NCBI GenBank assembly: GCA_965644265.1
Contig: OZ286462.1
Location: forward strand, 50,530,001 to 50,594,000
Reading direction: 5' to 3'
Length of the DNA stretch: 64,000 nt
Source: Glycera tridactyla
Lineage: Eukaryota
Shown here: piece after piece, positions 1 to 63,252 of the stretch
Layout: each line of letters begins with the position of its first letter
Numbering within the stretch: position 1 is the stretch's first letter
Translations under genes and position numbers: made by a program
Notes under the pieces: generated by a model
Seen by the model: only the letters and a program-made list of their open reading frames with translations
What the model was told of the DNA's origin: nothing
Databases searched by the model: none

Positions 1-16
1 GATCTCGTCAGGTGAA

Positions 17-2065
17 ATGGAGGGCGATAATCAAGCCACCCCTGCTCCATCAAGAAAGGACATTGCTGCGCGAAATTTCTCGGCGTTATCCCCAGATACA
101 GACACAGAAGACATGGAGGATAAGAAACGAAAGCAAGATGAATATACGCCAATTCGTGAATGTGGGAGGGTTTCTGATAGTATCGCGGAGGGTGAAACGT
201 CACCAGAAGGTATAGTAACCTCCACTCAAACTAATATACTGTCCCATCAAGATGACCAAGCAACCAACAGCCATTTTGAATCATTGGATTCTCTTGATAT
301 AGTAGACAGGTCTGACCTTACTACGAGCGGTCTGTCTGCTATATATGAAAGTGTCAACGGTGAGGATTCGACCAATCAAGAAAGCGTGGAATCGATTTCG
401 GGGAATATTGACATACCAGTTGAGCAGTCATCTGCGACCGAACTTAACCCACCACGCTGTTCGACGGATAGCCTCAATAGATCCGTAATGACGACAACAT
501 TAGATGAAATGCAGGCACCATATAACCATCAATCTGATCCAATGATAACACATGCCAGTGTATATAAGGTGATGGATGGTACTGAACTGGGTGGTAATGA
601 AATGGATGCTAAAAAATATACTGCGCCAGAAATGTTACGTTCATCCGAAGTTCAACAAGATGATACCAAAAATCTGACCACGCGTCATACACTTGAGAAA
701 CTAATTGATGACAAAATTAAAATGGCTATGGCATCGAACATAAGTCATATAGGAATTGACGAAAGTGAGATTGATAGAGTAGTCTCTGAGAAGATGCATG
801 CATTTGCAAAGCAATATGTAGACTCGAGTATTACGCGAGGCTTAGAACAATCAAAAAGAACATGGCGAAGGGATATGGAGCAGTATGTAGAAGCATCCGT
901 AGAAGACAGCACCAGAGTATGCAAGAGGGATATACTGCTATTACATCAGCGACTAGCTACAAGTGTACAAGCACAACAAGAGCAGATAAAGAATATTGAT
1001 GCTGAACTGAAATTGTTATCACAGGAAGTTGAAAAAGAGCTGGAATCGTTAAAAAATCATGTTGGCAATCAGAATGGTGGTTCTTGCATACACGCAGATG
1101 TACTGGAGGATATTAAAGAGGCACTGGGTCAAATTACCTGTCTTGTGGGAGAGCATCATGAGCGAATTGATAAAACTGAATTTGATGTGGATCAACTGCA
1201 AAAATTGGAAAGATTGAGTGTGGTGGTGCTAGATGGTTTACCTGTGGATAGGGATTTGGCCCTACATGAGCAAGTTTTAAGGCTGTTGAACATGAAAACA
1301 TCCCTGAAGTTGAATCAATCTGACATATGCCAAGTCATACGTTTTGGGCCGGTAAGGGAAAATAGACCTAGATCAGTTAGAATGAAATTATGTAACCCTG
1401 ATCTTAGAAGACAACTCCTGAAACAAAAGGGGAAACTGAGGGGCACAGATTACTACCTTAGGGAATCCTTGACACCCTGGGAAAGTGATCTATTCCATGA
1501 TGCCAAGGATGCCCAAAAAGAGGGACTGATAAGCCATGTGTGGACCCAGGATGGTAGGGTCTTTGTGTCACATGGAAGAGAGAAACCAAAATTCCTTCTA
1601 AGTAACCAAAAATCATTAGAGGATGCAATAACTAAAGCAGGAAAATATAGACCAACCCCTCTTAGTTCGAGTGTGGTAGAAACTGGTGGGCCTCTAAATA
1701 TATCAGGGGATCAGATGGTTCAGAATGGAAAGAAATCCAAGGAGACTTTCCCCCCTGCATCATTTCGTGAAATGCCAGCTAGGGAGGAGACTACTGCACG
1801 AACAGAGGAAATTCATACTGTTACAGAAAATCACTCTGGAATTGCACAAAAATTACAAGATGTCCGAAAAGAGATAGAAAACAAGGAAAGATCAATCATG
1901 GAGCAATGGCAAAGTAATCGTGAGACTAAATCAACTTATGTGCCCAAAATCAAAGATTTCCCATTGTTTAATATGAATCGAACAGTACCGGTTGGAACCA
2001 CCGATCCGACTGCGCGGGATAATAGTAGAAGACGGAATCGAACCGGCCGCGGGAACCGGAAATAA
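17..2065 (+). CDS. LINE ORF1p-like protein (682 aa): acidic disordered N-terminus, coiled coil, RRM + CTD, basic tail
   Basis: Heptad-rich segment (QQEQIKNIDAELKLLSQEVEKELESLK), then VVLDGLP...ICQVIRFG...RPRSVRMKL...LRGTDYYLRESLTP...VWTQDGRVFV, matching the RRM/CTD type of LINE ORF1. Arg-rich C-terminus. The frame is open to the window edge, so the true start may be upstream. Confidence 0.85.
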   Translation: MEGDNQATPAPSRKDIAARNFSALSPDTDTEDMEDKKRKQDEYTPIRECGRVSDSIAEGETSPEGIVTSTQTNILSHQDDQATNSHFESLDSLDIVDRSDLTTSGLSAIYESVNGEDSTNQESVESISGNIDIPVEQSSATELNPPRCSTDSLNRSVMTTTLDEMQAPYNHQSDPMITHASVYKVMDGTELGGNEMDAKKYTAPEMLRSSEVQQDDTKNLTTRHTLEKLIDDKIKMAMASNISHIGIDESEIDRVVSEKMHAFAKQYVDSSITRGLEQSKRTWRRDMEQYVEASVEDSTRVCKRDILLLHQRLATSVQAQQEQIKNIDAELKLLSQEVEKELESLKNHVGNQNGGSCIHADVLEDIKEALGQITCLVGEHHERIDKTEFDVDQLQKLERLSVVVLDGLPVDRDLALHEQVLRLLNMKTSLKLNQSDICQVIRFGPVRENRPRSVRMKLCNPDLRRQLLKQKGKLRGTDYYLRESLTPWESDLFHDAKDAQKEGLISHVWTQDGRVFVSHGREKPKFLLSNQKSLEDAITKAGKYRPTPLSSSVVETGGPLNISGDQMVQNGKKSKETFPPASFREMPAREETTARTEEIHTVTENHSGIAQKLQDVRKEIENKERSIMEQWQSNRETKSTYVPKIKDFPLFNMNRTVPVGTTDPTARDNSRRRNRTGRGNRK

Positions 2066-2152
2066 CTCAGCGAGCTGTATAAACACGTGTTTCGAGACAA
2101 GTCGCTTTCTCACAACTATATTCACCTAAATTTCACCTTTTGAAAGGCACGT

Positions 2153-2221
2153 ATGGCATCATATACGAATGTCATTATCGCACGACGAATTCAAGATCGT
2201 AAAGAAGGATTTAAAAACGTG
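2153..2221 (+). CDS. Putative first coding exon of the esterase gene (MASYTNVIIARRIQDRKEGFKNV)
   Basis: ATGG at 2153, 23 open codons, ending exactly at a G|GTGAGT donor (phase 0) that matches the phase-0 acceptor at 2591/2592. Inferred; no transcript evidence. Confidence 0.55.
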
Positions 2222-2591
2222 GTGAGTGCTTCCCTTACAGTATATATTGTATCGCGCACAATACAATGGATGTGGGATTCGGCATTTTGGATGTGCGAAC
2301 CGGTGTCATGATTGCCGAGTATAACGACATGGCGAATATAGGCCTAATATTTCATACATTAATATTGAAGAGGATTATATTGAGTAAAAATATACAGTAG
2401 TGATTTATTATTTTAATGTAAAATAAAAGGGCACAAAATCAGAAAAGTTTGGAAACTAAAAAGATTTTTTGAAATAAAATACTATGAATTAAACCTGATG
2501 ATAATTGAAGAGAAAATTGAGTACTTAAGTGAGAATCATGTAGATATTTCTGCTATTCTTGTCTATGAAAGTTTATAATTTTTGTTTGTAG
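2222..2591 (+). other. Putative 370-nt GT-AG intron
   Basis: Starts GTGAGT, largely AT-rich interior, ends TTTTTGTTTGTAG. The esterase frame opens right after this AG (the acceptor TAG is itself the upstream in-frame stop). Confidence 0.55.
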
Positions 2592-3479
2592 AAAACTCCT
2601 TGGCTGGCAGAAAGAATTGCAGAATGCAGAATGGGTTACATCAAAGAAACATGTCCTGTCTTTAGACGCAGACATTATATAGAAAGATATGAACCACCTG
2701 ACGTCTTGGTTACTGGAAGCAGCCATGTTTGGAGAATGGGAAAAGCTGTAAATGGAGACCTGGGTGAACATCACGATTTGAAAATGCTACTACAGAACTG
2801 GCATTTTAGAGGTATAAGTGGAGGAAAGTGGGCTACTTTTGAGCAGGAATTCCAGGGCCAGTTCCCTGATACCAGATTGGGCAGAAAGAAATACCGGCTC
2901 CACGGAAATACTCTGCAAAACATTATGGATGATGGATTAGCCCCAAATTATGTAATCCTGATCCTGGGTTCTAATGATGTAGATGGGATGAACAGAAGGG
3001 AACATACACTCAATGATAATATAAGAGACCCGAGAGTAAGAAGGAGACAATTGGATAACATTAGAAGATGTGAATATGTTAGAATCACTACAAAAATCAG
3101 ATCTACCATGTTGTTTATGAGAAAATGTTTCCCATACTCTAATTTCTATCATCTTCCAATCATGTGGAGACCTGGATGGGGGGACGAAACTAGAGCATTG
3201 GCAGTGTGGATTGATTCATTTATCAGGATGCAGTTAAACCCACCATGTACACCCGAAAGAATTAGATTCATTAATATTCACTGTCTGCTTGTGAAACAAT
3301 ACAGGACCTGTCATGATATGGATACATCACAGAAACCAAAGAAAAGGCCCTGCAGGCAAGGGGACCTACTCACAGGTGTATTTGACAAAGACAGAGTGCA
3401 TCTCAACAAATATGGAAACATAGGTCTTTGTAAATCTGTGGTCAGCCCAGTTTTGGATGAATGGTACAATAACAACTAG
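2592..3479 (+). CDS. SGNH/GDSL-family hydrolase (esterase); ATG-only ORF is 2631-3479 (282 aa), spliced form would be 318 aa
   Basis: Block I VLVTGSSHV, block II FRGISGG, block III VILILGSND and block V FDKDRVHLN (DxxH) are all present in order, so the Ser-Asp-His triad appears intact. Confidence 0.85.
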   Translation, partial: KTPWLAERIAECRMGYIKETCPVFRRRHYIERYEPPDVLVTGSSHVWRMGKAVNGDLGEHHDLKMLLQNWHFRGISGGKWATFEQEFQGQFPDTRLGRKKYRLHGNTLQNIMDDGLAPNYVILILGSNDVDGMNRREHTLNDNIRDPRVRRRQLDNIRRCEYVRITTKIRSTMLFMRKCFPYSNFYHLPIMWRPGWGDETRALAVWIDSFIRMQLNPPCTPERIRFINIHCLLVKQYRTCHDMDTSQKPKKRPCRQGDLLTGVFDKDRVHLNKYGNIGLCKSVVSPVLDEWYNNN

Positions 3480-4934
3480 GATTAAGGATTATTGGATAAA
3501 ATGAGGCAATGAAAGGAGAATTATCCAATTCAGTATTCTACCATTTTTGAAATATTATTACAACATGACCATACAGAATGAGAATCAGATTTGGGAAATA
3601 TATTCAATCAGAGGGGTGTATCAGGCCGCTACTATTGCAGAGTGCCCTAGTTATACCTCTCTTTTTGAAATAAAAACCCGGATATGCTTCTATCACTGTG
3701 AGGTTTATTTCTATGCTAGGCCTAAATCCAGGGCTTGTAAGTAAGCCTTGTACTCACAATTGATGGGGAACTCGGTTTCTGATAATGCCTGGTAATGGCC
3801 TATATCAAAACAGGGAAAGGAAATTTAAATTTAAATTTAATTGAATTGAACTCGTAACATGTTATATGCTGTAATATGGTTAACAGAATAGATCATGGTG
3901 ATGTAAACTGAGTAAGGTCAATCCAAGGTGGTGGCTACTGTTTATTGTTTATTGTTTAATTTTGATATCTGAATTACCTTGAGATTGCTCATCTCCTTAT
4001 TACTGATTTCAGAGTCCCAGTTGGTATATATAGGATAAAGACCAGTGCAAATGATATGATATAATATTACAAGAATGTAACCTGTCAAATTTATACAAAA
4101 GCTCTTCCTGTGAAATTCTTTTATTGGATAACAGTGCTGTAGGAGTACCCAGAGGAATTGTTTATGAGGATTGTCTTCTAGTTAACTGTGGATATCCAAA
4201 TTATTTTGAGACATTCTCACATCCTTATTATTGCCATCTGATTATTGCCATTTGATTTATTTTGAGACTGGTCTATAGATAATGTCGGAAGATTTTCTGT
4301 AAGAGTGCCGGAGGTAGTTTATATGAGCATTGTATTTTAGTAAATTGTGGATATCTGAAATATTCTGAATTATTTTGAGACATTTCTTAAATTTTAATTT
4401 ATTTTCAGTTATATATTTTTGATTAATTGTGTTTTGTTTAGAAGGCCTTTCCAGCTATGAAAGGCTCAAATGGCTTTAAATTAAATTAAATTCAGATGAA
4501 TATTTTTGCTTAGACGTATCCTCTAAGGTTTGGAGGTGAATTTTGAATTTTGTTAAGAGTATGGTAAATTATCCTACTATCTTATTATTCTTCTGGCTTC
4601 TTACTGTTTATTAAACCCAGAAAGTGGTGCGTATATGGATACAAGGTACTCCCTTTTTTCTTATGTCTTCTTATGATTGTGCTTACCACACTATTGGATT
4701 TTAATGATAGAAATGACAACTGAAGAAAATCATTTTAAAAAAAAAAAAAAAAAAAACAGGGAGAGAGTACTGATATGATCAGACATCAGTCATCTACTAT
4801 ACTGACAGTTTTTTTGCAATATCTTATATTATACCGCTTTCTATCTTGCAAAAAGTGTGCTAAGAAATCTTAGCAAAATCAGATTACATACTAACACTTT
4901 CATCTACTTTTCTCATTAACTAACACATCATCAT

Positions 4935-7817
4935 ATGATAGAGTCTATATTGTTTAATACATCAAAGGAATTGAAAACCTTGAAAGGCATTAAGGTTGCT
5001 TACTTAAATGTGAGGAGTGTGATAAATAAAATACATGAAATTGAATTATTATTACTACAATCAAAAATTGATGTTTTAATTTTGGGAGAAACCTTTTTAA
5101 ATCCCAGTATCTCAGATGGAAGTTTACAAGTGCCTGGGTATTATACAATCAGACTCGATCGTACAAAAGGTGGAGAGAAAAAGTCTGGAGGTGGTTTATT
5201 GGTGTATATACGATCAAACAGGGTTGTAGAACTTGTTGATGATCATACTATTTCATGCCCTGATATTGAGGGATTGTGGCTGAAGATGATACTACCAGAT
5301 ACTAGGCCCATTTTTATTGCAGGGATATATAGACCTCCATGTGGCAATCCAAAAGTGTATATAGAGTGGCTTGAAGAGAAAATAATTTCACTGGGTTTAG
5401 ATAGGATGAGTGAGCAAATAATTTTGGGAGATATTAATATTGACTTAAATAATACCAATGGTTCAAGATCCTATAAAAATGCTTTAAAGACATGCAATCT
5501 GACCCAAATCATCTCATGTGATACTAGAATTACAAAGGATACTTCTACTCTAATAGATCATATAGTTGTCAGTAATGTAAGCATGTATCATCAACATGGT
5601 GTCTTGGACATGGGTATTTCGGATCATAGTCTAATAATTACGTCTCGAAAAAAGGAGCATCAGTCTAGGCGTACTGAATTCGTATATTTTAGAGATTATA
5701 AAAGAGCAGATTATAATAAGATAAATGAAGATATTAAAAATCATGATTGGCAAGATTTTTATTCCTGTCCCGATGCAGACATGTGTGCAAGTTTATTTCA
5801 TGAAACTATAAATGACATATTGGACCGGCATGTACCTTTGAAACGTTATAAAGTCAGGGAAAATTGGCCAAAATGGTTAAATGGGGACTATCTGGACTTG
5901 GTTTCTGAGCGCCAAAAGGCAAGTAAGAATTATAGATTAAATAAATCAGAGGAAAATCTCCAATCAAAGAAAGATTTAGAAAAGAAATGTAAAAAATTAA
6001 AAACACAACTGCAACGCCAATATATAGATGACTCTTTTGTACAAAATTCAGAAAATCCTAAAAAATTATGGGAAACAATAAATCAATTTTGGGGACGATC
6101 AAATACAGGAATTGACATCCTAAGGATTGATGATACTACTGAGACAGGGGAAATTGCTCAAAAACTAAATAAATTTTTTAGCGAAATAGGAGTAAATTTG
6201 CAAAATAAAATACAGAGCGATGGCACAGACCCATTAGAGAATTTCCCTGTTACCTTAAAAAATAAGCTATCTCTCTCTGATACAAATATAGAAATTGTTA
6301 AAAGATTTATATCCAAAATAGTCATAAATAAAGCAGGGCGAGATGATGGACTACCAGGAAGAGTTCTTAAACAAACGGTGGATGTAATATCACCAATGTT
6401 GGTTTATTTATTTAATATTAGTACAAAAAATGGGGTTTTCCCAAAATTTTGGAAATCAGCTACTATTATCCCTTTATACAAGGATGGGCCTAGATCATCA
6501 GAGTCCAATTATCGACCAATTAGCTTATTAAGTGCAGTAAGCAAAATTTTCGAAAAAATAGTACATCAACAGGTCTCTACTTATTTTGAAGCACATGGTC
6601 TACTGTGTCGGGAGCAATCTGGGTTCCGGGCAGGTTGCTCCACTGGTACATGCTTGTTAGAATTTCTAGACAAGATCTATCTAAATATTGAAAATAATAC
6701 TACCAGTGGAGTGATCTTCTTGGATCTCAAAAAAGCTTTCGACACGGTGGACCATGGGATTCTTTTGAAAAAACTAGAGAAATATGGCGCAGATGATATT
6801 TGTGTGAAGTGGTTTGAGAGTTACCTGACCGAACGTGATTGTAGAGTCAAAGTGAATGGGGAGTTATCATCTGAATTGCCAGTATGTTGTGGTGTCCCAC
6901 AGGGGTCTATACTGGGTCCCTTACTATTTACAATATATGTAAATGATGTAACCAATTTTATGAAGGGACCCAGTATAAACCTCTACGCAGACGACACAGC
7001 CATCATGGTCTCTGACACTGATCCACTTATTCTACGAGAAAAATTGACAGACTCGCTCATGACAATTAGTAAATGGCTTCAAATGAATAAATTAAGTTTA
7101 AACTTAAAAAAGACCAAAGTAATGTTATTTGGTACTCGACCAAATTTGCGAAGATGTAAGTTTGACATCAGTGTCTTAGGAGACCAAGTAGAGGTTGTGT
7201 CGTCTTTTAAATATTTGGGAGTGATCTTGGATAGCTGTCTCACTTTTGCCTCACATGCAGAGTATATAAGAACGAAAACAATTGGAAGGGTGGGGGTCCT
7301 GGGCAGACTCAGGGGTGTTATTAGTAAATCAACGTCCCTGATGCTGTACAGGTCCCTCATCCTTCCTTTGTTTGATTATTGTGATATTGTGTATGACAGC
7401 TTAAATTTGAGTGATATTTCAAAATTACAGAGAGTGCAGAATAAGGCATTAAAGATAATAGCTAAGAAACCTCGCTTGACAAGCACAGATGATGTTCATT
7501 GCGAATTGAAAATGCCTCTGCTAAAAAGTCGTAGAAAGGATCATACCCTGATTCATGTTAATAAAATATTAGAAAAGAAAGTACATTCCCAATATACTCC
7601 ATTATGCTGTATTGCTGCCCCGAGTCACGGTTATCATACAAGATCCATAGATAAGCCATATCTTGAGTTACATGTTCCGCATAGAAGGTTGAGTGAGGGC
7701 TCTTTTAAATATAGAGGGCCAAAATTGTGGAATTCATATGTTGAACGATTTGAGGGTTGGAATCATTGTGAGCATGAACTATTTTTACAACAGCTACAAG
7801 CAACTGAGCCAATCTAA
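4935..7817 (+). CDS. LINE ORF2p: APE endonuclease + reverse transcriptase (960 aa), intact
   Basis: APE motifs YLNVRS, LGETFL, GDINID, IDHI, SDHS. RT motifs NYRPISLL, FLDLKKAFDTVDH, GVPQGSILGPLLF, LYADDT, FKYLGV. CR1-type C-terminus HGYHTRS...SFKYRGPKLWNS. Confidence 0.97.
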   Translation: MIESILFNTSKELKTLKGIKVAYLNVRSVINKIHEIELLLLQSKIDVLILGETFLNPSISDGSLQVPGYYTIRLDRTKGGEKKSGGGLLVYIRSNRVVELVDDHTISCPDIEGLWLKMILPDTRPIFIAGIYRPPCGNPKVYIEWLEEKIISLGLDRMSEQIILGDINIDLNNTNGSRSYKNALKTCNLTQIISCDTRITKDTSTLIDHIVVSNVSMYHQHGVLDMGISDHSLIITSRKKEHQSRRTEFVYFRDYKRADYNKINEDIKNHDWQDFYSCPDADMCASLFHETINDILDRHVPLKRYKVRENWPKWLNGDYLDLVSERQKASKNYRLNKSEENLQSKKDLEKKCKKLKTQLQRQYIDDSFVQNSENPKKLWETINQFWGRSNTGIDILRIDDTTETGEIAQKLNKFFSEIGVNLQNKIQSDGTDPLENFPVTLKNKLSLSDTNIEIVKRFISKIVINKAGRDDGLPGRVLKQTVDVISPMLVYLFNISTKNGVFPKFWKSATIIPLYKDGPRSSESNYRPISLLSAVSKIFEKIVHQQVSTYFEAHGLLCREQSGFRAGCSTGTCLLEFLDKIYLNIENNTTSGVIFLDLKKAFDTVDHGILLKKLEKYGADDICVKWFESYLTERDCRVKVNGELSSELPVCCGVPQGSILGPLLFTIYVNDVTNFMKGPSINLYADDTAIMVSDTDPLILREKLTDSLMTISKWLQMNKLSLNLKKTKVMLFGTRPNLRRCKFDISVLGDQVEVVSSFKYLGVILDSCLTFASHAEYIRTKTIGRVGVLGRLRGVISKSTSLMLYRSLILPLFDYCDIVYDSLNLSDISKLQRVQNKALKIIAKKPRLTSTDDVHCELKMPLLKSRRKDHTLIHVNKILEKKVHSQYTPLCCIAAPSHGYHTRSIDKPYLELHVPHRRLSEGSFKYRGPKLWNSYVERFEGWNHCEHELFLQQLQATEPI

Positions 7818-7960
7818 ATGACAACAATGTATTGAGTACTATTCATATTTTTATTTACATAATTGTACAATCATGGATTAATACTAAACACATCATTCAT
7901 CCTCTCTACTAACCTTTCTTCGACTGCTATCATTATCATAGAAATTGTTATAGGTGGAAA

Positions 7961-8050
7961 AGTATTTTTCGTCCTCATGGAAAAGCCCCAGGTTGTTTGG
8001 GGTAACTTGCTGTTTGACGAATCAAAATAAAGTCATATCTATCTATCTAT
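7961..8050 (+). other. LINE 3' terminus: stem-loop, AATAAA and (TATC)n tail
   Basis: GCCCCA-ggttgtt-TGGGGT hairpin (7985-8003), AATAAA 8026-8031, tandem TATC repeats. Confidence 0.75.
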
Positions 8051-8543
8051 AGCTGTGGCTGCTTTACTGTTCATTTGGAAATCGATTGTGAATACATTAA
8101 CTCAATCCCAAAAATGATTTGCACATCTACCACGGGACATTCTGTCTTATGTTTTGTCATGTTTTCTCCCACAACTGTGCATTTTTATCATTTCCTATGG
8201 CTGTTGGCCCATTTGTTTCCAGGAAATTATTCTGGGCACCATACTGCAGTTTTGTTCCATTTCTTCTCACATGATTTGTGAAGCTCATGAGACTAAAACT
8301 CTTGTCCAAGACATTTGTCCCAATAATAACTTTTCCTTTGTTGTGTCGATCCATGGAATATGAGAGAAGTTGCACTTTCATGTGCTGAAATATTCAGAGC
8401 CTGCATATAATTATGAGTGGAGTATGAGTGCTCTTTTTGTTATGCATCGATAGGTGGTTTCCAATGGTTCCATTGGAAAGCTTAGCAGATGTGATTGTTT
8501 TGACATATCCTCAGAACTCTATGTTTTATATGTTGGAAACAAA

Positions 8544-8704
8544 CATTTCATGCTGATTGTTTTGGCTTTTGGATTATGAAAATCAGACCAGAATTAGTGG
8601 AGATAGAGCATGAAGTTGGTATTGAGGTATGATAGCCGTTAGGCAGCATTTCTTTAGGGTTTCTATCCACCTCCGGCAGGTTTTGAGAGGTTTCTGTTGT
8701 GAGA
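8544..8704 (+). repeat. Dispersed repeat, probably a DNA-transposon fragment; second copy at 57584-57765
   Basis: Shared CATTT(C/T)ATGCTGATT..TTTTGG..TTT.GAT.ATGAAAATCAGACCAG..T.AGTGGAGATAGA and CACCTCCGG.CAGGTTTT..G. Confidence 0.6.
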
Positions 8705-9683
8705 AAATACCTGTAGTTTTATACCATTATAATGTATTGTCAATATCACCCATGAGATCTGTCCACCAGCTTCACACAGATCTGGCCAATCCTGGTCACA
8801 ATCAAAACAAATCGTTGGAAAATCATTCAAACCATGAACATTCGCTTCATTTCCTCAAAAGAAGGCTGATTTATATGAGATTATTATTTTTATGTCTGCC
8901 ATCTTTGACAAAACTTGAGCCTTCCATCTTGTGTCTGCAGTGATTGAGGCTAGAGTGTGACCCCATCATCCGGGCCATACACTGCGCAGAAGATTCACTA
9001 ACCAACCTATATAAAAACACATTATGCTATGGAAAATGCATTCAATTTTTTCAAACAATATTTTCTGGCTCAGTTGACTTTTTTGGAATCCAGTCGATAA
9101 TAAATGTTACCCTATACATCCAAGTACCACAGTTGGTGGGTTAAAGTGGAACTGGGGAAACTGGAATTTTTAAGGGTTGAGGAGAGCAGAGGTGTTATTA
9201 GTAGCCAAGCCCCTCAGGAAAACACACACTGACCCTGATGTGAATGAGTGCTTCCATACCAGAACTGATGTGATTATAACTCAAAATATCACGGCCAAGT
9301 AAAACATTTAGTATCTGCCAGCCTACCAACTGCGATGTGGTTATGTGTTGGTGGTTGCTCCTGCTCGAGGGAGACTTCCCCCACAGGCTTACTGCTTACA
9401 CTATGGCCACCACCACCAACAGCACAGCCACCACCCCCAGCATCTCTTGGTCCAATGTGATTACACGACATGATTGTTTAGGTTGGAGGCCGTTAGTATA
9501 ACTGCTGCTGACAATACGCACTGTTTATAAGTCATTCACCAGCCTTACTCTACATTCCCAGGATTGATTTGCTTGAATAGATAATAGACATTAGATAAAA
9601 GACAATTTCTTCAGAAGCATATCACCTGTCAGTCATCCTGAATGCTAATGGTGAACTGCTCCAAACATCACCCTTTACACAGA

Positions 9684-11714: not shown

Positions 11715-12850
11715 TCTATCACTTCCTGGCTCCCAGTCCCCTACCCAGAAACCGACCTGTGGTGTCCCTCAAGGATCTGTCCTTGGCCCCAACCTATTCA
11801 CCATTTACACTCTACCTCTCGGCGACATAGTGAGAAAACACAAATTAAACTTCCATCTTTATGCCGATGACACTCAGCTTTACCTAACCTTTGATGGTCA
11901 TGACCAGCTCTCAAAATCCAAAACAATAGACACCCTTGAACGATGCATTGCTGAAATCAGGGCATGGATGCTGGCCAACAAACTCAAGCTTGATGATTCT
12001 AAGACTGAGTTTCTCCTTTTCGCCAACCACAACAACCTCAATCCATCATCAACTGCGAAGATCAAGATTGGGGATGACACCATCAGCCCTGGCAGCTCTG
12101 CGAAGAATCTCGGAGTCATTTTTTATGACCACCTCAACCTCACCCCTCAAGTATCTGCTATCTGTAAGTCTGCTTTCTTTCAGCTTCACCGAATCAGCTG
12201 CATCCGCAAATACCTGACACCAGAAGCCACAAAGACCCTGGTCTACTCTCTGATCACATCCAAGCTTGACTACTGCAATAGCGCACTCTTCGGCCTTCCC
12301 AAGTTTCAGATCAGCAAGATCCAACATGTGATGAACTGCGCTGCTCGATTAACAGTATCCTGTAGTCGCCATCAGCATATCAGCCCTATCCTGAACAAAC
12401 TTCACTGGCTCCCTATTGAACACCGGATAACATTTAAAATCCTATCCCTCACCTACAAAGCCCTCCATGGCTTAGCCCCTAGCCACCTGTCACAACTCCT
12501 ACATCATTACAACCCTTCCCGCTCTCTTCGCTCCTCATCGCAACACCTCCTTATAGTTCCAAAAACTCACTATTGCAAACTGGGAAATCGTGCCTTCACC
12601 TATGCCGCTCCAACCCTATATAACTCTCTCCCTTTGGAAATCAAACTTGCACCTTCTTTTAGCACCTTCAAGTCCAGACTCAAGACCCACTTGTTCACTC
12701 TCGCATTCCCAACATAACCATATGATCCAAGGTCTCTCTGCATGCTCACTCCTGTTCTTTTGTTTTTTCTTTCAGGTACATACCTATGTAAAGCGCCCTT
12801 GAGCTCTATGAGGAAAAGGCGCTATATAAATGCTCATTATTATTATTAAT
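11715..12850 (+). mobile_element. 5'-truncated L2-clade LINE copy
   Basis: RT C-terminal half, open from [11 protein letters not shown] (11758) through [28 protein letters not shown] to the stop at 12717. Typical L2 3' end TGTAAAGCGCC...AAGGCGCTATATAAAT followed by (ATT)n. Confidence 0.93.
11758..12717 (+). pseudogene. Truncated L2 reverse transcriptase reading frame (no frameshifts or stops)
   Basis: The ORF-track entry 11830-12717 continues in frame upstream to the GVPQG motif; the endonuclease and RT N-terminus are absent. Confidence 0.85.
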
Positions 12851-22020: not shown

Positions 22021-24578
22021 CACAAATACCACCCTAAGCATGAAATGAGATGATGGATAAAATCGTTCTTGATATTGTTTTGGATATTATATCATGAAAC
22101 CTTTTACTTGAGATATTCTTCTCCTAGAAAAGCATAATGCATTTCAGCAATTATGAATCTACAAATAATCAGCAGGAAAGGATCCAGTGCGAGTATGTGG
22201 TTGATATCACATGGTTGATCACAGATCACAGAAACTATCGCAGTAATGGAGGAAATATTGGTCACCATTATACATATCCTCCTGACCCTTTTCTATCATA
22301 TATGGCAAAAGACTTCCATTTATATCTTGTACTGTGATGCAATTCTGCTACTTTGGTTGGGTAGATATTAGGGGAGATTTGCTAGCAGTCAAGATGGATT
22401 GTAGCCATGTGGCAGGCAATTCAGTCAGTTCATAGCTTGCATTGATGAGCTGTAGATGATGACCAGATATAAAAGAGATGTGAGGTGTGAAGGGTTATCG
22501 GAGGATGCCACTAATGATGATCTGTGCCGTATTGGTAGAGTGAGAGAGCATTAAGGCAGTTGAGAGAGAGAGAGACGGCCATCCTTCATTTGATGGAAAG
22601 GTTGAGGCTATCCACCGAATCATTCACTTGCCAGGTCGAAATCATTTGGCAATGTGTTTGCCTCGCTGCCTTCCATATACACCAGTCCAAACGTGGCCGA
22701 ATGAGAAACCATAGAATTTGCGTCAACTGGACAGGCATCATCAGCTGGTGTGCAGTGAAGCGCGTGAATGACACTGATCGGCACAAATCAGTCCCCCAGC
22801 AGCGGTTGGACTGGCGTTTGCTGATCTACTTCAAGCTTGGATGCCACCGGCCAAGTTACCTCTCGTAGTCAGACCTTCATCTGCTCACAAAGGCAACTCA
22901 GGACATTGACCATTGTGGCATTTATAACACTATACACACTTCATTTCCTTCCTATGGCAAGATATCTGGGATCATTTCGATGAAATGACATGTGCTAAAA
23001 TGAAAATGATGAAATGGTAGGGTACATAAAACCAAAAATCAGTGCCAACTAGGCACATTTGAGTCAGCATACTTTTATAAGAATACAAAATTGTTGCATA
23101 TGGACATATGAAATAGTATATTGAAACTGAATCAATATGTCTGAATAGCCCATCCAGCTTCTTTAGTCAGCTCCCTACCCGAGGGTTACTTCTACAGAAC
23201 TGTGAAGAACATCTCGGGTATTACAGCTGCTCCCAAGAAATGATTAGTGGCCAGTTTTGTCCCGGATTTGGAAGTTGTAGGGGCCTAATATTGACATCCT
23301 CTCATGGTCTTGGCTGAGCTTGGTGTATAAATTGGTTTGATGTTGGCTGGGGTCATCATGTTCCAGACTGCCCTAGTCAGGCAAGTTCTAAGAGTCAAAT
23401 ATTGATTTTAGTAGCCTGTCATGATTGGAAATAACCAAGATTCCAGGAGCCAGTCGGCCCAAAACTTTATCAGTATTCAGTGAAGTTGCCAATAAAATTG
23501 CTTCATAGGGGCCTACCTATCAGTGTAATCCTTGGAAATGTATGGCGGGCATGACAAGGGTGCCACAGCAGAATACAAGCAATGCTGCTAGAATTTCCCA
23601 ATCTGAATGATCATTTCTGAAGTACATGTACACGTATGCAATCATGTGATCTCACCTCCACCACAAGGTCACATGACCACAACATCTAGTCGCATTTGCC
23701 ATGGGTCGACAAAGGGGTTTGGATGAATCTTGAAAGCTCCCGAGCTTCCAAGCTTACTGTGAGTTCCGTGAATTTATCATTCATGATATCACTATGCTCT
23801 TGCTCTTTGTGGTTTGATCATTTGACTCACGTTTTTGCTGGTTTGACCCATCAATACAGAATGATCGTACATTTGATTCGTAGGATAAACACTCATGATT
23901 GTCTATGGCCCATTATCCTCAGCCATGACCCATACTTTGGCCAGTTATTGGGCCGCATGAGCCGCCTTTGTTCCAGATAATCTGCTGCACTAATGAAATA
24001 AGACACAATGGGAATGGTGGACTCCCGATCAGTCGCAGTCAACAGGTGCAGGATGGGATGGTTCAAATTAATCACTCGGCCGCAATCACGCCCCTGGGAT
24101 GCTACTCCCTCACAGAATGCACTGACAAGAATGCCGTATCAGCCACCACTTGCTGGCACATCGTTTTTATCTCACATTCAATTCAATTTATAATTTAGAA
24201 AGATTTGGTTTCGATTGTCAGATTTTTGTCACGATTTGTTCAAAGCATCCTATTCTGGTATTGATAACATCAATCAAATCTGCATTGATGATTTTGTCTA
24301 TCCGTTTTCCTGTGATAAGATGATTTGATATGCCCAGCAGTCGAATATACAGTGTACCGCAGGAAAAAATTAAGAAACCAGGAGATAGCATCCTCAAGGA
24401 GATTGATTGTTGTAACTTGTGCTTTGTGAAGCCGGATCTCGCAGATGTCTTGACCTCTATGGTCATTAATTATACCGTGTATAATAGAATGTGACTACAA
24501 ATCAGTCTGACTTGAACTTCTGATGAGAGTCAATTCATCAGAAATCGCATGTTTTAGAGGGTCTTTCAGTGGTTGGAT

Positions 24579-24808
24579 CGGACGGACGGACAGAGGGACG
24601 GACGGAGGGACGGACGGACGGAGGGACGGACGGACGGAGGGAGGGCAGACTGAGGGACGGAGGGAGGGACGGCCGTTGGGACGGACGTTGGGACGGACGG
24701 ACGGACGTTGGGACGGACGGACGGAGGGACGGACGGAGGGATGGACGGAGGGAGGGACGGACGGACGGAGGGACGGACGGAGGGACGGACGGAGGGACGG
24801 ACGGAGGG
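24579..24808. repeat. (GGAC/GGAG)n compound microsatellite running into a gap; possibly part of a reverse-oriented HINE-like element
   Basis: Directly visible; same motif class as 40512-40616. Confidence 0.9.
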
Positions 24809-25259
24809 NNNNNNNNNNNNNNNNNNNNNNNNNNNNNNNNNNNNNNNNNNNNNNNNNNNNNNNNNNNNNNNNNNNNNNNNNNNNNNNNNNNNNNNNNNNN
24901 NNNNNNNNNNNNNNNNNNNNNNNNNNNNNNNNNNNNNNNNNNNNNNNNNNNNNNNNNNNNNNNNNNNNNNNNNNNNNNNNNNNNNNNNNNNNNNNNNNNN
25001 NNNNNNNNNNNNNNNNNNNNNNNNNNNNNNNNNNNNNNNNNNNNNNNNNNNNNNNNNNNNNNNNNNNNNNNNNNNNNNNNNNNNNNNNNNNNNNNNNNNN
25101 NNNNNNNNNNNNNNNNNNNNNNNNNNNNNNNNNNNNNNNNNNNNNNNNNNNNNNNNNNNNNNNNNNNNNNNNNNNNNNNNNNNNNNNNNNNNNNNNNNNN
25201 NNNNNNNNNNNNNNNNNNNNNNNNNNNNNNNNNNNNNNNNNNNNNNNNNNNNNNNNNNN
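24809..25259. other. Assembly gap
   Basis: N run. Confidence 1.
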
Positions 25260-25762
25260 ACATGCGCATGTACTTGTGCATGACAGACTCATGCGTTGAG
25301 TATGGATGGGTGTTCCTGCTCACAAGAGGAGCACTGATTCCTAATAGGTGTGAGGTGGAATGTCATTGTCAAGTCTGACACCATTAACTCAGCAGCAACA
25401 ACCATAAGTTGGCCGACAGTGAAGTAGAGCGATAGATGGGACATTGGTGCCAGTGTGTCAGCAAGTTCGTGAGCTGCCTGCGGATGACTTCTGATTGGTC
25501 AATGAGCCTTCGTTGACTCATTCATTCTTCGGAAGCTAATGACTTCACCATTATACCAGAGAACCTGCCAGATGCAGCAGATATTCTGCCATCCGATACT
25601 GTCTGTAATTCCCATCCGCTTTGCAATAGTTCTTGGATATCATTTTCAAATGGTTCCTTTGTGGTACAAAAGCAACAACTCAAGGTATCAGACATATGGT
25701 AGTTCATTCAGTAGCCATAGTCAGTGACTTGGGTTGTAAATTTTATGTTTGGTTCAGGCACC

Positions 25763-40609: not shown

Positions 40610-43290
40610 AACTTTGCGGAACCAGTATCTCTGGAACCGCTGCACCGATTTACACCAAATCAAGTTTCCTGGAAGCATCTTGATGTGTAGATGTGCACTG
40701 GCACGTTTATTCTGGATTTGGGCATGTGATTGCCTGCCCCACGGGCAGGTGAAATGTGAGAAACTTCAGGATGTCATCAGGATTTTGCGGAACTCATATC
40801 TCCACTATGGCTGCACCAATTCACACCAAATCAAGTTTCCTGGAAGCGTCTTGATGTGTAGGTGTGCACTGGCATGTTTATTCTGGATTTGGGCATGTGA
40901 TTGCCTGCCCACGGGCAGGTGAAATGTGAAAAACTTCAGGATGTCATCAGGATTTTGCGGAACTCATATCTCCACTATGGCTGCACCAATTCACACCAAA
41001 TCAAGTTTCCTGGAAGCGTCTTGATGTGTAGGTGTGCACTGGCATGTTTATTCTGGATTTGGGCATGTGATTGCCTGCCCACGGGCAGGTGAAATGTGAG
41101 AAACTTCAGGATGTCATCAGGATTTTGCGGAACTCATATCTCCACTATGGCTGCACCAATTCACACCAAATCAAGTTTCCTGGAAGCGTCTTGATGTGTA
41201 GGTGTGCACTGGCATGTTTATTCTGGATTTGGGCATGTGATTGCCTGCCCACGGGCAGGTGAAATGTGAGAAACTTCAGGATGTCATCAGGATTTTGCGG
41301 AACTCATATCTCCACTATGGCTGCACCAATTCACACCAAATCAAGTTTCCTGGAAGCGTCTTGATGTGTAGGTGTGCACTGGCATGTTTATTCTGGATTT
41401 GGGCATGTGATTGCCTGCCCACGGGCAGGTGAAATGTGAAAAACTTCAGGATGTCATCAGGATTTTGCGGAACTCATATCTCCACTATGGCTGCACCAAT
41501 TCACACCAAATCAAGTTTCCTGGAAGCGTCTTGATGTGTAGGTGTGCACTGGCATGTTTATTCTGGATTTGGGCATGTGATTGCCTGCCCACGGGCAGGT
41601 GAAATGTGAAAAACTTCAGTATGTCATCAGGATTTTGCGGAACTCATATCTCCACAATGGCTGAACCATTTCACACCAAATCAAGTTTCCTGGAAGCGTC
41701 TTGATGTGTAGGTGTGCACTGGCATGTTTATTCTGGATTTGGGCATGTGATTGCCTGCCCAAGGGCAGGTTAAATGTGAAAAACTTCTGGATGTCATCAG
41801 GATTTTGCGGAACTCATATCTCCACAATGGCTGCACCGATTCACACCTAATCAAGTTTCCTGGAAGCGTCTTGATGTGTAGGTGTGGACTGGCCTTTTTT
41901 TTCGGGATTTGGGCATGTGATTGCCTGCCCCACGGGCAGGTGAAATGTGAAAAACTTCAGGATGTCATCAGGATTTTGCGGAACTCATATCTCCACTATG
42001 GCTGCACCAATTCACACCAAATCAAGTTTCCTGGAAGCGTCTTGATGTGCAGGTGTGCACTGGCATGTTTATTCTGGATTTGGGCATGTGATTGCCTGCC
42101 CACGGGCAGGTGAAATGTGAAAAACTTCAGGATGTCATCAGGATTTTGCGGAACTCATATCTCCACTATGGCTGCACCAATTCACACCAAATCAAGTTTC
42201 CTGGAAGCGTCTTGATGTGTAGGTGTGCACTGGCATGTTTATTCTGGATTTGGGCATGTGATTGCCTGCCCAAGGGCAGGTTAAATGTGAAAAACTTCAG
42301 GATGTCATCAGGATTTTGCGGAACTCATATCTCCACTATGGCTGCACCAATTCACACCAAATCAAGTTTCCTGGAAGCGTCTTGATGTGCAGGTGTGCAC
42401 TGGCATGTTTATTCTGGATTTGGGCATGTGATTGCCTGCCCAAGGGCAGGTTAAATGTGAAAAACTTCTGGATGTCATCAGGATTTTGCGGAACTCATAT
42501 CTCCACTATGGCTGCACCGATTCACACCTAATCAAGTTTCCTGGAAGCGTCTTGATGTGTAGGTGTGCACTGGCCTTTTTTTTCGGGATTTGGGCATGTG
42601 ATTGCCTGCCCCACGGGCAGGTGAAATGTGAAAAACTTCAGGATGTCATCAGGATTTTGCGGAACTCATATCTCCACTATGGCTGCACCAATTCACACCA
42701 AATCAAGTTTCCTGGAAGCGTCTTGATGTGCAGGTGTGCACTGGCATGTTTATTCTGGATTTGGGCATGTGATTGCCTGCCCAAGGGCAGGTTAAATGTG
42801 AAAAACTTCTGGATGTCATCAGGATTTTGCGGAACTCATATCTCCACTATGGCTGCACCGATTCACACCTAATCAAGTTTCCTGGAAGCGTCTTGATGTG
42901 TAGGTGTGCACTGGCCTTTTTTTTCGGGATTTGGGCATGTGATTGCCTGCCCCACGGGCAGGTGAAATGTGAAAAACTTCAGGATGTCATCAGGATTTTG
43001 CGGAACTCATATCTCCACTATGGCTGCACCAATTCACACCAAATCAAGTTTCCTGGAAGCGTCTTGATGTGCAGGTGTGCACTGGCATGTTTATTCTGGA
43101 TTTGGGCATGTGATTGCCTGCCCACGGGCAGGTGAAATGTGAAAAACTTCAGGATGTCATCAGGATTTTGCGGAATTCATATCTCCACAATGGCTGCACC
43201 AATTCACACCAAATCAAGTTTCCTGGAAGCATCTTGATGTGTAGGTGTGCACTGGCATGTTTATTCTGGATTTGGGCATGTGATTGCCTG
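40610..43290 (+). repeat. 170/171-bp tandem satellite, ~16 well-conserved copies, degenerating to ~44720
   Basis: Unit starts recur at 170-171-bp spacing (e.g. 40901, 41071, 41241, 41411); internal hairpin CCTGCCC-AC-GGGCAGG. Confidence 0.97.
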
Positions 43291-44043
43291 CCCACGCTAG
43301 CATGCTTATTATGGTTTTTGGCCTTTAATTGGCTGCAGCAGGTGAAATATCTGAAAAACTTCAGGATAGTACATGCTTCCATCAAGCTTATGCGGAACTC
43401 ATATCTCCATACCTGCTGCCCCGATCAACACCGATCAACACCCAATCAAGTTTCCTGGAAGCGTCTTGATGTGTAGGTGTGCACTGGCACATTTATTCTG
43501 GATTTGGGCATGTGATGGGTTGCCCATGGACAGTTGAAATGTCTGAAAAACTTCAGCATGGTATACACTCTCATCAAGATTTTGCGGAACTCATATCTCC
43601 ACAATGGCTGCACCGATTCACACCAAATCAAGTTTCCTAGAAGTGCCGTGATGTGTGGGTGTGCACTGGCCCATTTATTCTGGTGTCGGCCATTTGATGG
43701 GCTGCCCTTGGGCAGGTGAAATGTCTGAATGCTAGGCACTCCCATCCACACTTTGCAGAACTCATATCTCCTCAACCGCTCCACCGATTCACACAAAATG
43801 AAGTTTTCCTGAAGCGTCCTGATGTGTAGGTGTGCACTGGCAGATTTATTACAGATTTGTACATGCAATGGGCTGCCCATGGGCAGTTGGAATATCTGAA
43901 GGACTTCAATATGGCATGCACTCTTATTCAGACTTAATGGAACGCATCTCTCTAAAACGGCTTCACCGATCCACATTGAATGAACTTTCCCTGAAGTGCC
44001 TTGATGTGTAGCTGTGCACTGACATCTTTATCATGGGTGTGGG

Positions 44044-62829: not shown

Positions 62830-63252
62830 CAAAGGGTTAATAATTTTAGGCCCAATATAAGAAAATGCCTTCTGACCTGTTGACGTTCTGAGAAGGGGTA
62901 TTTCCATATTCCCTTGGGAAGCACTTCGAGTATGGTGATCATGAGTCAAACCTAATGGTTTGATGAGATCCTGTAGATAAGGTGGTAGCTCATTTCTTAC
63001 AAATTTTCTCATAAGTTCATAAATGTGCACATCTCTCACATGCTCTAGACAAAGAATAGAGAGCTGAGAGTGCATCTCACATGTACTTGCCCAACGGTTT
63101 TTCAGGAGTATTGTGCGTAGAGCCTTGTTTTGTATTCTCTGCAGACTCAAGGAGTCTTTTGCGGAGATACCATGAAACACTGTGTCGCAATACGTAAGTA
63201 AAGGTAGTGCCAGAGAAATATACAGATTCTTAGCCGATTGTCTATCAATGAA
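62830..63252 (-). pseudogene. CR1-type LINE ORF2 C-terminal fragment
   Basis: Frame reads FIDRQSAKNLYISLALPLLTYCDTVF...LQRIQNKALR...HDHHTRS...RTSTGQKAFSYIGPK, homologous to the C-terminus of 4935-7817. Confidence 0.88.

What the first reader, a model, noticed from the sequence alone, without database searches (positions are those of the whole stretch)
2153..3479. In-phase spliceosomal intron predicted in the LINE-borne esterase
Seen: ATGG at 2153 opens 23 codons that end exactly at G|GTGAGT (2221/2222). 370 nt later, TTTTTGTTTGTAG| (2591) is followed immediately by the start of the open esterase frame (KTPWLAERIAECR-MGY...). Both sites are phase 0, giving a 318-aa product. Established: introns are removed from RNA used for retrotransposition. 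Inference: if the intron is real and shared by copies, the element must mobilise unspliced RNA while expressing the esterase from a spliced sub-genomic RNA, like retroviral env. That would be a highly unusual expression strategy for a LINE.
Basis: partly seen in the sequence, partly recalled or inferred. Interest (0 to 1): 0.9.

Follow-up and report, generated by a model that had tools for sequence, protein, structure and literature searches.

The report
Conserved intron in a LINE's esterase gene
A jumping gene of the LINE type carries a separate esterase gene split by a real-looking intron. Distant relatives have an intron at the same spot, which is unusual because copying through RNA normally erases introns.

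Summary

On its own this is weak. A comparable start-plus-donor arises in about 4% of shuffles. The acceptor phase is automatic, because the TAG is also the stop that opens the frame.

Relatives make the case. At 22-29% esterase identity, at least five independent relatives have the same layout: a short ATG-led exon, a GT...YAG intron of 118-521 nt, and a compatible phase. The acceptor lies exactly 43 residues before the catalytic serine in six sequences, the window included. Other lineages are precisely intron-less at that point.

The gene order ORF1, esterase, spacer, APE/RT ORF2 recurs in relatives, so the esterase is LINE-borne.

The intron is therefore probably real and old, which implies that unspliced RNA is the copied template. 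The "env-like sub-genomic RNA" picture does not fit. The intron is small, lies downstream of ORF1, and the exon-1 ATG sits at or near the ORF1 stop. That suggests translation by re-initiation on a spliced full-length RNA.

No transcript data and no second copy from the same genome were available. The window's own exon 1 shows no detectable homology to the relatives' exon 1.

The parts
2..2065 (+). ORF1. The frame is open from the window's first bases, so it may be cut by the window edge. First ATG at 17, stop at 2063-2065. It has a coiled-coil-like middle and a C-terminal domain that looks like an RRM followed by a CTD.
   Evidence: Homologous to the ORF upstream of the esterase in L009 (tblastn E 1.6e-17) and L005 (BLASTP E 9e-6). 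Pfam gives only a sub-threshold Baculo_FP_2nd hit. The single-sequence structure model was too poor to use (pLDDT 58.6).
2066..2152 (+). Gap of 87 nt between the ORF1 stop and the esterase start. It contains no ATG.
2153..2221 (+). Predicted esterase exon 1: ATG plus 22 codons, phase 0.
   Evidence: Relatives have an analogous short ATG-led exon. This exon's own peptide shows no detectable homology to theirs.
2222..2591 (+). Predicted spliceosomal intron of 370 nt, GTGAGT...TTTGTAG, 30% G+C.
   Evidence: The acceptor lies at the same place as in L001, L008, L009, L014 and L015, 43 residues before the catalytic Ser.
2592..3479 (+). Esterase exon 2: 295 codons plus the stop. SGNH/GDSL hydrolase with Ser44, Gly77, Asn128 and a DxxH block near residue 270.
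   Evidence: Alignment A1. AlphaFold model pLDDT 86.9. Best PDB fold matches are a GDSL-like lipase (3p94) and PAF-AH alpha subunits. Pfam Lipase_GDSL_2 scores below its cut-off.
3480..4934 (+). AT-rich spacer with no long ORF. It holds imperfect 160-230 nt repeats (about 3968-4389), (AAATTT)3 at 3821-3840 and an A20 run at 4737-4756.
   Evidence: A comparable repeat-bearing spacer of about 810 nt separates the esterase from ORF2 in L012. No target-site duplication was found around the A-run.
4935..7817 (+). ORF2, 960 aa, intact: apurinic-type endonuclease plus reverse transcriptase.
   Evidence: Pfam Exo_endo_phos E 7e-9 and RVT_1 E 1e-37. Its best match anywhere is the ORF downstream of the esterase in L012, at 35% identity over 493 aa, E 1e-95.
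7818..8050 (+). 3' untranslated region ending in (ATCT)3AT after an AATAAA.

Best explanation
The window holds the larger part of an intact three-gene LINE (non-LTR retrotransposon).

Genes:
- ORF1 encodes a coiled-coil protein with an RRM-like domain.
- A separate SGNH-type esterase gene follows.
- ORF2 encodes an endonuclease plus reverse transcriptase.

The esterase gene is split by a U2-type GT-AG intron (2222-2591), 43 codons upstream of the catalytic serine. The intron is old. It occupies the same position, within one nucleotide, in distantly related elements, and has been lost precisely in some lineages.

Proposed mechanism:
1. The element is transcribed as one long RNA (inferred).
2. 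Molecules that keep the intron are the ones copied back into DNA, so the intron is inherited (inferred from the intron's persistence).
3. On those molecules the esterase start yields only a 52-codon dead-end peptide (shown).
4. Spliced molecules encode the full 318-aa esterase (shown as a reading frame; splicing itself not shown).
5. The esterase is probably translated by re-initiation after ORF1, because its ATG lies at or just after the ORF1 stop (inferred).
6. When a spliced molecule is occasionally copied back, an intron-less lineage arises (inferred from the intron-less relatives).

Splicing would thus act as a switch between template RNA and esterase messenger. It would not produce an env-style sub-genomic RNA.
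For: Sequence signals in the window.

Same architecture in relatives at 22-29% esterase identity. All have compatible phases and in-frame stops in the intron.
- L002: 21-codon exon 1, GTAAGA...CAG, 198 nt.
- L008: 24 codons, GTATTG...CAG, 328 nt.
- L009: 15 codons, GTAAGT...CAG, 521 nt.
- L012: 37 codons + 2 nt, GTACTC...CAG, 130 nt.
- L015: 31 codons, GTAAAT...CAG, 118 nt.
- L001 and L014: acceptor only.

Position of the acceptor: the catalytic Ser is residue 44 counted from the acceptor in six sequences including the window. Ala at position 10 is present in 6 of 6.

Precisely intron-less relatives:
- In L004/L016/L018 the N-terminal peptide runs straight into the exon-2 sequence.
- That peptide matches exactly the predicted exon 1 of L002 (10 of 500 shuffles reach the score) and of L008 (45 of 500).
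- L005, L006 and L007 are also continuous across the junction.

Tree: in a rough neighbour-joining tree, intron-bearing forms lie on both sides of the root. The intron-less P0023 sits beside the intron-bearing P0001.

LINE context:
- ORF1 homologues lie upstream of the esterase in L009 and L005.
- An APE ORF 35% identical to the window's ORF2 lies downstream of the esterase in L012/L013.

ORF1 stop relative to the exon-1 ATG: -14, 7, 87 and 148 nt, and 1-2 nt in L008 and L002 by reading.

The decayed copy L019 still carries the intron signals.
Against: - No RNA evidence of splicing could be reached.
- No second copy from the window's own genome is available, none in the window. No close relatives turned up in any collection.
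- The window's exon-1 peptide has no detectable similarity to the relatives' exon 1.
- Homology of exon 2 upstream of Met 2631 rests on few positions. Only positions 10 and 13 are shared with two or more others.
- The donor-plus-ATG configuration arises by chance in 4-8% of trials, and the acceptor phase is automatic.
- All intron-bearing relatives come from short contigs of essentially one host-associated metagenome sample. No single contig shows ORF1, esterase and ORF2 together apart from the window.
- The A20 run inside the spacer is unexplained and could mark an element boundary.
- The neighbour-joining tree has very long branches.
Confidence: 0.68

Rival explanations
1. There is no functional intron in this copy. 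The esterase is a 282-aa protein starting at Met 2631, and the ATG/GTGAGT/TAG signals are chance features of an AT-rich inter-ORF spacer.
For: - The chance estimate is 4-8% for the start-plus-donor.
- The acceptor phase is automatic, because TAG is the stop that opens the frame.
- The window's exon-1 peptide is not detectably homologous to the relatives' exon 1.
- Gene callers start most relatives at internal Mets.
Against: - The frame opens exactly at the position of the acceptors in five other lineages, with Ser at residue 44 and no gaps.
- In relatives the sequence between the acceptor and the first Met is coding, as the intron-less forms and tblastn alignments starting at residue 10 show.
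- 2153 is the first ATG after the ORF1 stop, and 2222 is one of only two GTRAG sites in the spacer.
Confidence: 0.15
2. The ORF1-esterase unit and the APE/RT ORF are two separate elements lying side by side. The first would end at the A20 run (4737-4756). The second would be an ORF1-less LINE with a repeat-bearing 5' UTR. On this reading the esterase gene is not LINE-borne, and its intron says nothing about LINE biology.
For: - An A20 run lies directly before the last 178 nt upstream of ORF2.
- ORF1-less CR1-group elements are reported to have 100-500 bp repeated subunits near the 5' UTR (PMC13343379).
- The closest database relatives of ORF2 (L010, L011) have their own classical coiled-coil-plus-esterase ORF1 overlapping ORF2. 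That esterase is not BLASTP-similar to the window's.
Against: - L012/L013 show the same order, homologous esterase then repeat-bearing spacer then APE ORF. That ORF is the best match of the window's ORF2 anywhere.
- No target-site duplication was found around the A-run.
- No trace of another ORF1 lies upstream of ORF2.
- Even on this reading, the ORF1-esterase unit behaves as a repeated, diverging, sometimes 5'-truncated and decayed family (L005, L019).
Confidence: 0.12
3. The intron-bearing module belongs to, or was borrowed from, a Penelope-like element. That is the one retroelement class known to keep introns, and some of its members carry esterases.
For: - PLEs retain introns after retrotransposition and can have coiled-coil ORF1s (PMC8557442).
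- Esterases occur in Penelope-clade elements (PMC3905857).
Against: - The only reverse transcriptases next to the esterase, in the window and in L012, are of the APE-LINE type.
- No GIY-YIG or PLE-type RT turned up near it.
Confidence: 0.05

Closest known systems
Esterase-type (type IV) ORF1p of CR1/L2/RTEX LINEs, e.g. zebrafish ZfL2-1 (PDB 4c1b; PMC3905857, PMC4120745)
   Same: An SGNH-fold hydrolase with an intact catalytic set, encoded upstream of an APE/RT ORF2 in a LINE. The window's nearest ORF2 relatives in the database (L010, L011) have exactly this classical type.
   Different: - Here the esterase is a separate gene downstream of an ORF1 with an RRM-like domain. Schneider et al. state that no esterase ORF1p in Repbase included an RRM.
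- It is split by an intron.
- It lies 1.45 kb upstream of ORF2 instead of abutting it.
- It is not BLASTP-similar to the L010 esterase.
- 4c1b was not among the top 50 fold matches.
Penelope-like elements that retain introns (Arkhipova et al. 2003, as cited in PMC8557442)
   Same: A retroelement that passes a spliceosomal intron on to its copies, with conserved intron positions among diverged members.
   Different: - The RT here is a LINE-type APE/RT, not a PLE RT with GIY-YIG.
- The PLE introns described in that paper are mostly in the 5' UTR and overlap the promoter. Here the intron splits a coding gene.
Human LINE-1 splicing and SpIREs (PMC5860796)
   Same: LINE RNA contains working splice sites. 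Spliced RNA is occasionally copied back and gives precisely intron-less copies, as the intron-less lineages here suggest.
   Different: In L1, splicing is reported as damaging and SpIREs as evolutionary dead ends. Here splicing would be needed to make one of the element's own proteins, and intron-less lineages look viable.
Retroviral env and LTR-retrotransposon sub-genomic splicing
   Same: Unspliced RNA serves as the genome and spliced RNA as messenger for an accessory protein.
   Different: The env intron removes gag-pol. Here the intron is 118-521 nt, lies after ORF1 and removes no gene.
GDSL esterase ORF3 of bdelloid LTR retrotransposons and Terminons (PMC5408684)
   Same: A stand-alone GDSL esterase gene used as an extra module of a retroelement.
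   Different: A different element class and a different position (downstream of pol). That paper mentions no intron.

Membership tests
U2-type spliceosomal intron | GT donor close to the GTRAGT consensus and an AG acceptor preceded by a pyrimidine tract | tested here: met
   G|GTGAGT at 2221/2222. The 12 nt before the AG contain 9 pyrimidines, followed by TAG|. A YTNAY-type branch candidate lies about 17 nt upstream of the AG, found by eye, which is weak evidence.
U2-type spliceosomal intron | Removal restores one continuous reading frame that cannot be read through | tested here: met
   Phase 0 on both sides. There are 8 in-frame stops if the intron is read through, and its length is 370 nt, not a multiple of 3. 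The joined product was not sent to any search tool.
U2-type spliceosomal intron | Same position in homologous genes, and precisely intron-less homologues | tested here: met
   The acceptor lies 43 residues before the catalytic Ser in 6 sequences. Five relatives have complete exon 1/GT...AG models. L004/L016/L018, L005, L006 and L007 are continuous across the junction.
U2-type spliceosomal intron | Spliced transcripts observed | not testable with these tools
   No transcriptome of the source organism could be reached. None of the relatives' contigs is known to be cDNA.
SGNH/GDSL hydrolase | Catalytic Ser (block I), Gly (II), Asn (III) and His (V) | tested here: met
   S44, G77 and N128 are invariant in 18 sequences, and the DxxH block is conserved.
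SGNH/GDSL hydrolase | SGNH fold | tested here: met
   Model pLDDT 86.9. Foldseek top hits are 3p94 (a GDSL-like lipase) and PAF-AH alpha subunits, probability 1.00.
SGNH/GDSL hydrolase | Pfam family score above the curated cut-off | tested here: not met
   Lipase_GDSL_2 scores 16.8 bits against a cut-off of 32.9. This is a divergent subfamily.
APE-type LINE (non-LTR retrotransposon) | An ORF2 with an AP-endonuclease domain followed by a reverse transcriptase | tested here: met
   Exo_endo_phos and RVT_1 both score above their cut-offs. There are 121 homologues with E <= 1e-20.
APE-type LINE (non-LTR retrotransposon) | The esterase gene is part of the same element as ORF2 | tested here: met
   The collinear order esterase - spacer - APE ORF is found in L012/L013, with homologous proteins on both sides. 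This rests on two independent instances only.
APE-type LINE (non-LTR retrotransposon) | Element ends, target-site duplication, and 5'-truncated copies in the same genome | not testable with these tools
   The 5' end lies outside the window, and no other copy of this genome is available. L005 has a truncated ORF1 next to an unrelated ORF, which is only suggestive.
Type IV esterase ORF1p (ZfL2-1-like) | Coiled coil and esterase in one ORF1 that abuts or overlaps ORF2, with no RNA-binding domain | tested here: not met
   The esterase is a separate two-exon gene after an ORF1 with an RRM-like domain, and lies 1455 nt from ORF2. It shows no BLASTP similarity to the type IV ORF1 of L010.
Penelope-like element | PLE-type RT, usually with a GIY-YIG nuclease | tested here: not met
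   The neighbouring RT is APE-type in both the window and L012.
env-like sub-genomic splicing | The splice removes the upstream genes, so the accessory ORF becomes 5'-proximal | tested here: not met
   The donor lies 157 nt downstream of the ORF1 stop, and the intron contains no gene.

The most novel reading that the evidence does not exclude
A lineage of APE-type LINEs has kept a coding spliceosomal intron throughout its diversification and uses splicing as a switch. Unspliced RNA is the copied template. Spliced RNA is the only messenger for an element-encoded lipid or acetyl esterase, which is translated by re-initiation after ORF1. That would mean these LINEs select or protect intron-containing RNA for reverse transcription, a property so far ascribed to Penelope-like elements and retroviruses rather than LINEs.
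Probability: 0.5. Interest if true: 0.8.

Novelty: new variant of a known kind. Interest (0 to 1): 0.7.

Why it matters
LINEs are taken to copy mature RNA, so a coding intron should be lost at the first jump. In human L1, splicing is described as a dead end.

A LINE family that keeps an intron across lineages only about 25% identical, and needs splicing to make one of its own proteins, raises two questions:
- How does the element keep unspliced RNA available for copying?
- Why is the esterase dose tied to splicing?

It also adds a gene layout not described in the papers I could read: an ORF1 with an RRM-like domain together with a separate esterase gene. Finally, it gives a clean natural marker, intron present or absent, for which RNA form was copied.

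Tried and rejected
Searches that found nothing close:
- Word-index protein searches with the esterase and with ORF1 found nothing.
- An exact look-up of the 282-aa ORF found nothing.
- The window holds no second copy.
- Scans of metagenome and viral contigs with the window's esterase found no relative.

- The PDB sequence search gave no meaningful hit for the esterase or ORF1.
I did not send it to any other tool.
- The single-sequence ORF1 model was too poor (pLDDT 58.6), so no fold search was run on it.

Negative or inconclusive tests:
- Rfam found nothing relevant in 1-9000.
- No residual classical esterase ORF1 lies upstream of ORF2.
- No target-site duplication lies around the A-run.
- L014's upstream part could not be aligned to L015's exon 1. 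The idea that L014 is a copy truncated inside the intron remains open.
- A reading of L005 as intron-bearing was dropped, because its frame is continuous across the junction.

Step left out: I sent no joined-exon sequence to any search tool. Exons were searched and aligned apart, by reference. The only joining was one split codon of L012 translated in a script.

Possible slip: one search printed open-frame coordinates for relatives, some of them decayed, which implicitly shows where their frames end.

Full report
**1. The observation**

The coordinates are exact.
- ATG at 2153.
- 23 codons ending at 2221.
- GTGAGT at 2222-2227.
- A 370-nt, 30% G+C stretch ending in TTTTGTTTGTAG at 2591.
- An open frame from 2592 to the stop at 3477-3479.
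- Product: 23 + 295 = 318 aa.

Read without splicing, the exon-1 frame ends after 52 codons.

Two caveats apply. The TAG at 2589-2591 is itself the stop that opens the esterase frame, so the acceptor's position and phase are automatic. An ATG-led frame ending in phase 0 at GTRAGT appears in 4.2% of 5000 dinucleotide-preserving shuffles of the spacer, and the base rate across the window gives 0.084 expected sites. The window alone is suggestive, not convincing.

**2. What the protein is**

Pfam gives only sub-threshold GDSL hits. An exhaustive HMMER search found 31 distant relatives, the best at 29% identity. In the alignment with these, Ser44, Gly77 and Asn128 are invariant and the DxxH block is conserved. 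The AlphaFold model built on that alignment is confident (pLDDT 86.9). Its best PDB matches are a GDSL-like lipase (3p94) and PAF-acetylhydrolase alpha subunits. It is therefore a divergent but probably active SGNH hydrolase. The ZfL2-1 esterase (4c1b, named in PMC3905857) was not among the top 50 fold matches.

**3. The intron in relatives**

DNA around the relatives was fetched by exact look-up and by one metagenome scan. Five independent lineages show the complete architecture:

| Locus | Exon 1 | Donor...acceptor | Intron | Phase |
|---|---|---|---|---|
| L002 | 21 codons | GTAAGA...CAG | 198 nt | 0 |
| L008 | 24 codons | GTATTG...CAG | 328 nt | 0 |
| L009 | 15 codons | GTAAGT...CAG | 521 nt | 0 |
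| L015 | 31 codons | GTAAAT...CAG | 118 nt | 0 |
| L012 | 37 codons + 2 nt | GTACTC...CAG | 130 nt | 2, on both sides |

L001 and L014 show the acceptor only.

Counted from the acceptor, the catalytic serine is residue 44 in the window, L001, L008, L009, L014 and L015. It is residue 45-46 in L012 and L002. Alanine at position 10 is shared by all six of the first group. The window's frame thus opens exactly where five other lineages have their acceptor. That is hard to explain if the window had no intron.

Three of the six donors depart from the consensus at +4/+5. This would fit incomplete splicing, but that is an inference.

**4. Intron-less relatives**

In L004/L016/L018 the protein begins with a peptide that runs straight into the exon-2 sequence. 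When that peptide is searched against the upstream regions of intron-bearing loci, its best match is exactly the predicted exon 1 of L002 (10 of 500 shuffled queries reach the score) and of L008 (45 of 500). L005, L006 and L007 are also continuous across the junction.

In a rough neighbour-joining tree, intron-bearing forms lie on both sides of the midpoint root. The intron-less P0023 sits beside the intron-bearing P0001. This suggests an old intron with several precise losses. The branches are long and the tree is only indicative.

State of the copies:
- L019: the esterase frame changes at least three times, yet it still has the GTAAAT...CAG signals at the homologous place.
- L018: one stop and one frame change.
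- L014: one frame change.
- The P0023 lineage ends prematurely once.
- In the window's element all three genes are unbroken.

**5. Weak point for the window itself**

Its exon-1 peptide is not detectably similar to the others. Upstream of Met 2631, only positions 10 and 13 are shared with two or more relatives. Support for exon 1 in the window rests on three things: the splice signals, the analogy of layout, and the fact that 2153 is the first ATG after the ORF1 stop. In addition, 2222 is one of only two GTRAG sites in the spacer.

**6. Is it LINE-borne?**

- ORF1 of the window is homologous to the ORF upstream of the esterase in L009 (E 1.6e-17) and in L005.
- L012/L013 have, about 810 nt downstream of the esterase, an endonuclease ORF that is 35% identical over 493 aa to the window's ORF2. 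This is the best match found anywhere.
- Both spacers carry imperfect internal repeats.

The order ORF1 - esterase - spacer - ORF2 is therefore a conserved element plan.

ORF2 has APE and RT domains, and the element ends in (ATCT)3AT. The nearest database relatives of ORF2 (L010, L011, 32% identity) are LINEs with a classical coiled-coil-plus-esterase ORF1 that overlaps ORF2. That esterase is not BLASTP-similar to the window's.

An A20 run at 4737-4756 inside the spacer is unexplained, and no flanking duplication was found. The rival reading, two adjacent elements, keeps about 12% of my confidence.

**7. How it most likely works**

Shown:
- Unspliced RNA cannot encode the esterase.
- The intron persists in diverged and decayed copies.
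- Intron-less lineages exist.
- The exon-1 ATG lies between 14 nt inside the ORF1 end and 148 nt past it, and 1-2 nt past it in L008 and L002 by reading.

Inferred:
- Intron-containing RNA is the template that gets copied.
- A spliced fraction serves as esterase messenger.
- The esterase is translated by termination and re-initiation after ORF1.
- Rare copying of spliced RNA founds intron-less lineages.

The env analogy fails because the intron removes no gene.

**8. Comparison with what is known**

- Esterase ORF1 proteins of CR1/L2/RTEX LINEs are well known (PMC3905857, PMC4120745, PMC13343379). They are described as a single ORF1 without an RNA-binding domain, and without introns in the papers I could read.
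- Intron retention is described as a peculiarity of Penelope-like elements (PMC8557442).
- L1 splicing gives dead-end SpIREs (PMC5860796).
- TART has introns in antisense transcripts (PMC1636488).

My literature searches turned up no LINE with a conserved coding intron. The library is incomplete, however. Kapitonov and Jurka 2003 was not held, and Repbase could not be consulted.

**9. Verdict**

The intron is probably real and old, and it sits in a LINE. I class this as a new variant of a known kind. My confidence is about 0.68 for the whole model. It is higher for 'the family has a conserved intron here' and lower for the details of exon 1 in this copy and for the translation mechanism.

Process notes:
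- N stretches were left alone.
- No contig looked human.

Noticed in passing
window 3480-4934; L012 1365-2174: The spacer between the esterase and ORF2 carries imperfect 160-230 nt repeats, (AAATTT)3 and an A20 run (4737-4756). The L012 spacer also has about three imperfect repeats and a doubled AATTGGTTGAATTT just before ORF2. This might be an internal promoter or a translation element for ORF2. The A-run could instead be the tail of a nested insertion.
   Followed up: partly
window 11758-12717 (+) and 62836-63249 (-): Two 3' fragments of reverse transcriptases from other LINE families, 29% and 36% identical to the C-terminal part of ORF2. They look like 5'-truncated copies.
   Followed up: partly
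window 24495-25378: A short-period G/C-rich repeat, translating as GRTDGR-type runs on one strand and PSVRPS-type runs on the other, flanks a masked N stretch. The N runs were left untouched.
   Followed up: no
window 42432-43976: ORF-like segments with an internal two-fold repeat on both strands, probably a tandemly duplicated repeat unit.
   Followed up: no
L010 1825-2448 and 4345-6057: Upstream of the classical esterase-ORF1 LINE, this contig holds a second GDSL-type ORF and an ORF with a weak RT hit from another retroelement. Esterase genes seem to recur around retroelements in that genome.
   Followed up: no
L014 1780-2038 versus L015 542-659: The 3' parts of the two introns share a TGCTAATA motif, a branch-point-like CTAAT, about 25-30 nt before the acceptor. 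Upstream of that, L014 no longer aligns and is preceded by a fragment of another LINE. It could be a copy truncated inside the intron.
   Followed up: partly
L018 about 330-352; L004 about 140-160: In the intron-less lineage, ORF1 ends with a peptide (..IPRYR / ..IPRYH). It resembles the PRYR motif that ends exon 1 in L008 and L009. This may be chance or a trace of rearrangement.
   Followed up: no
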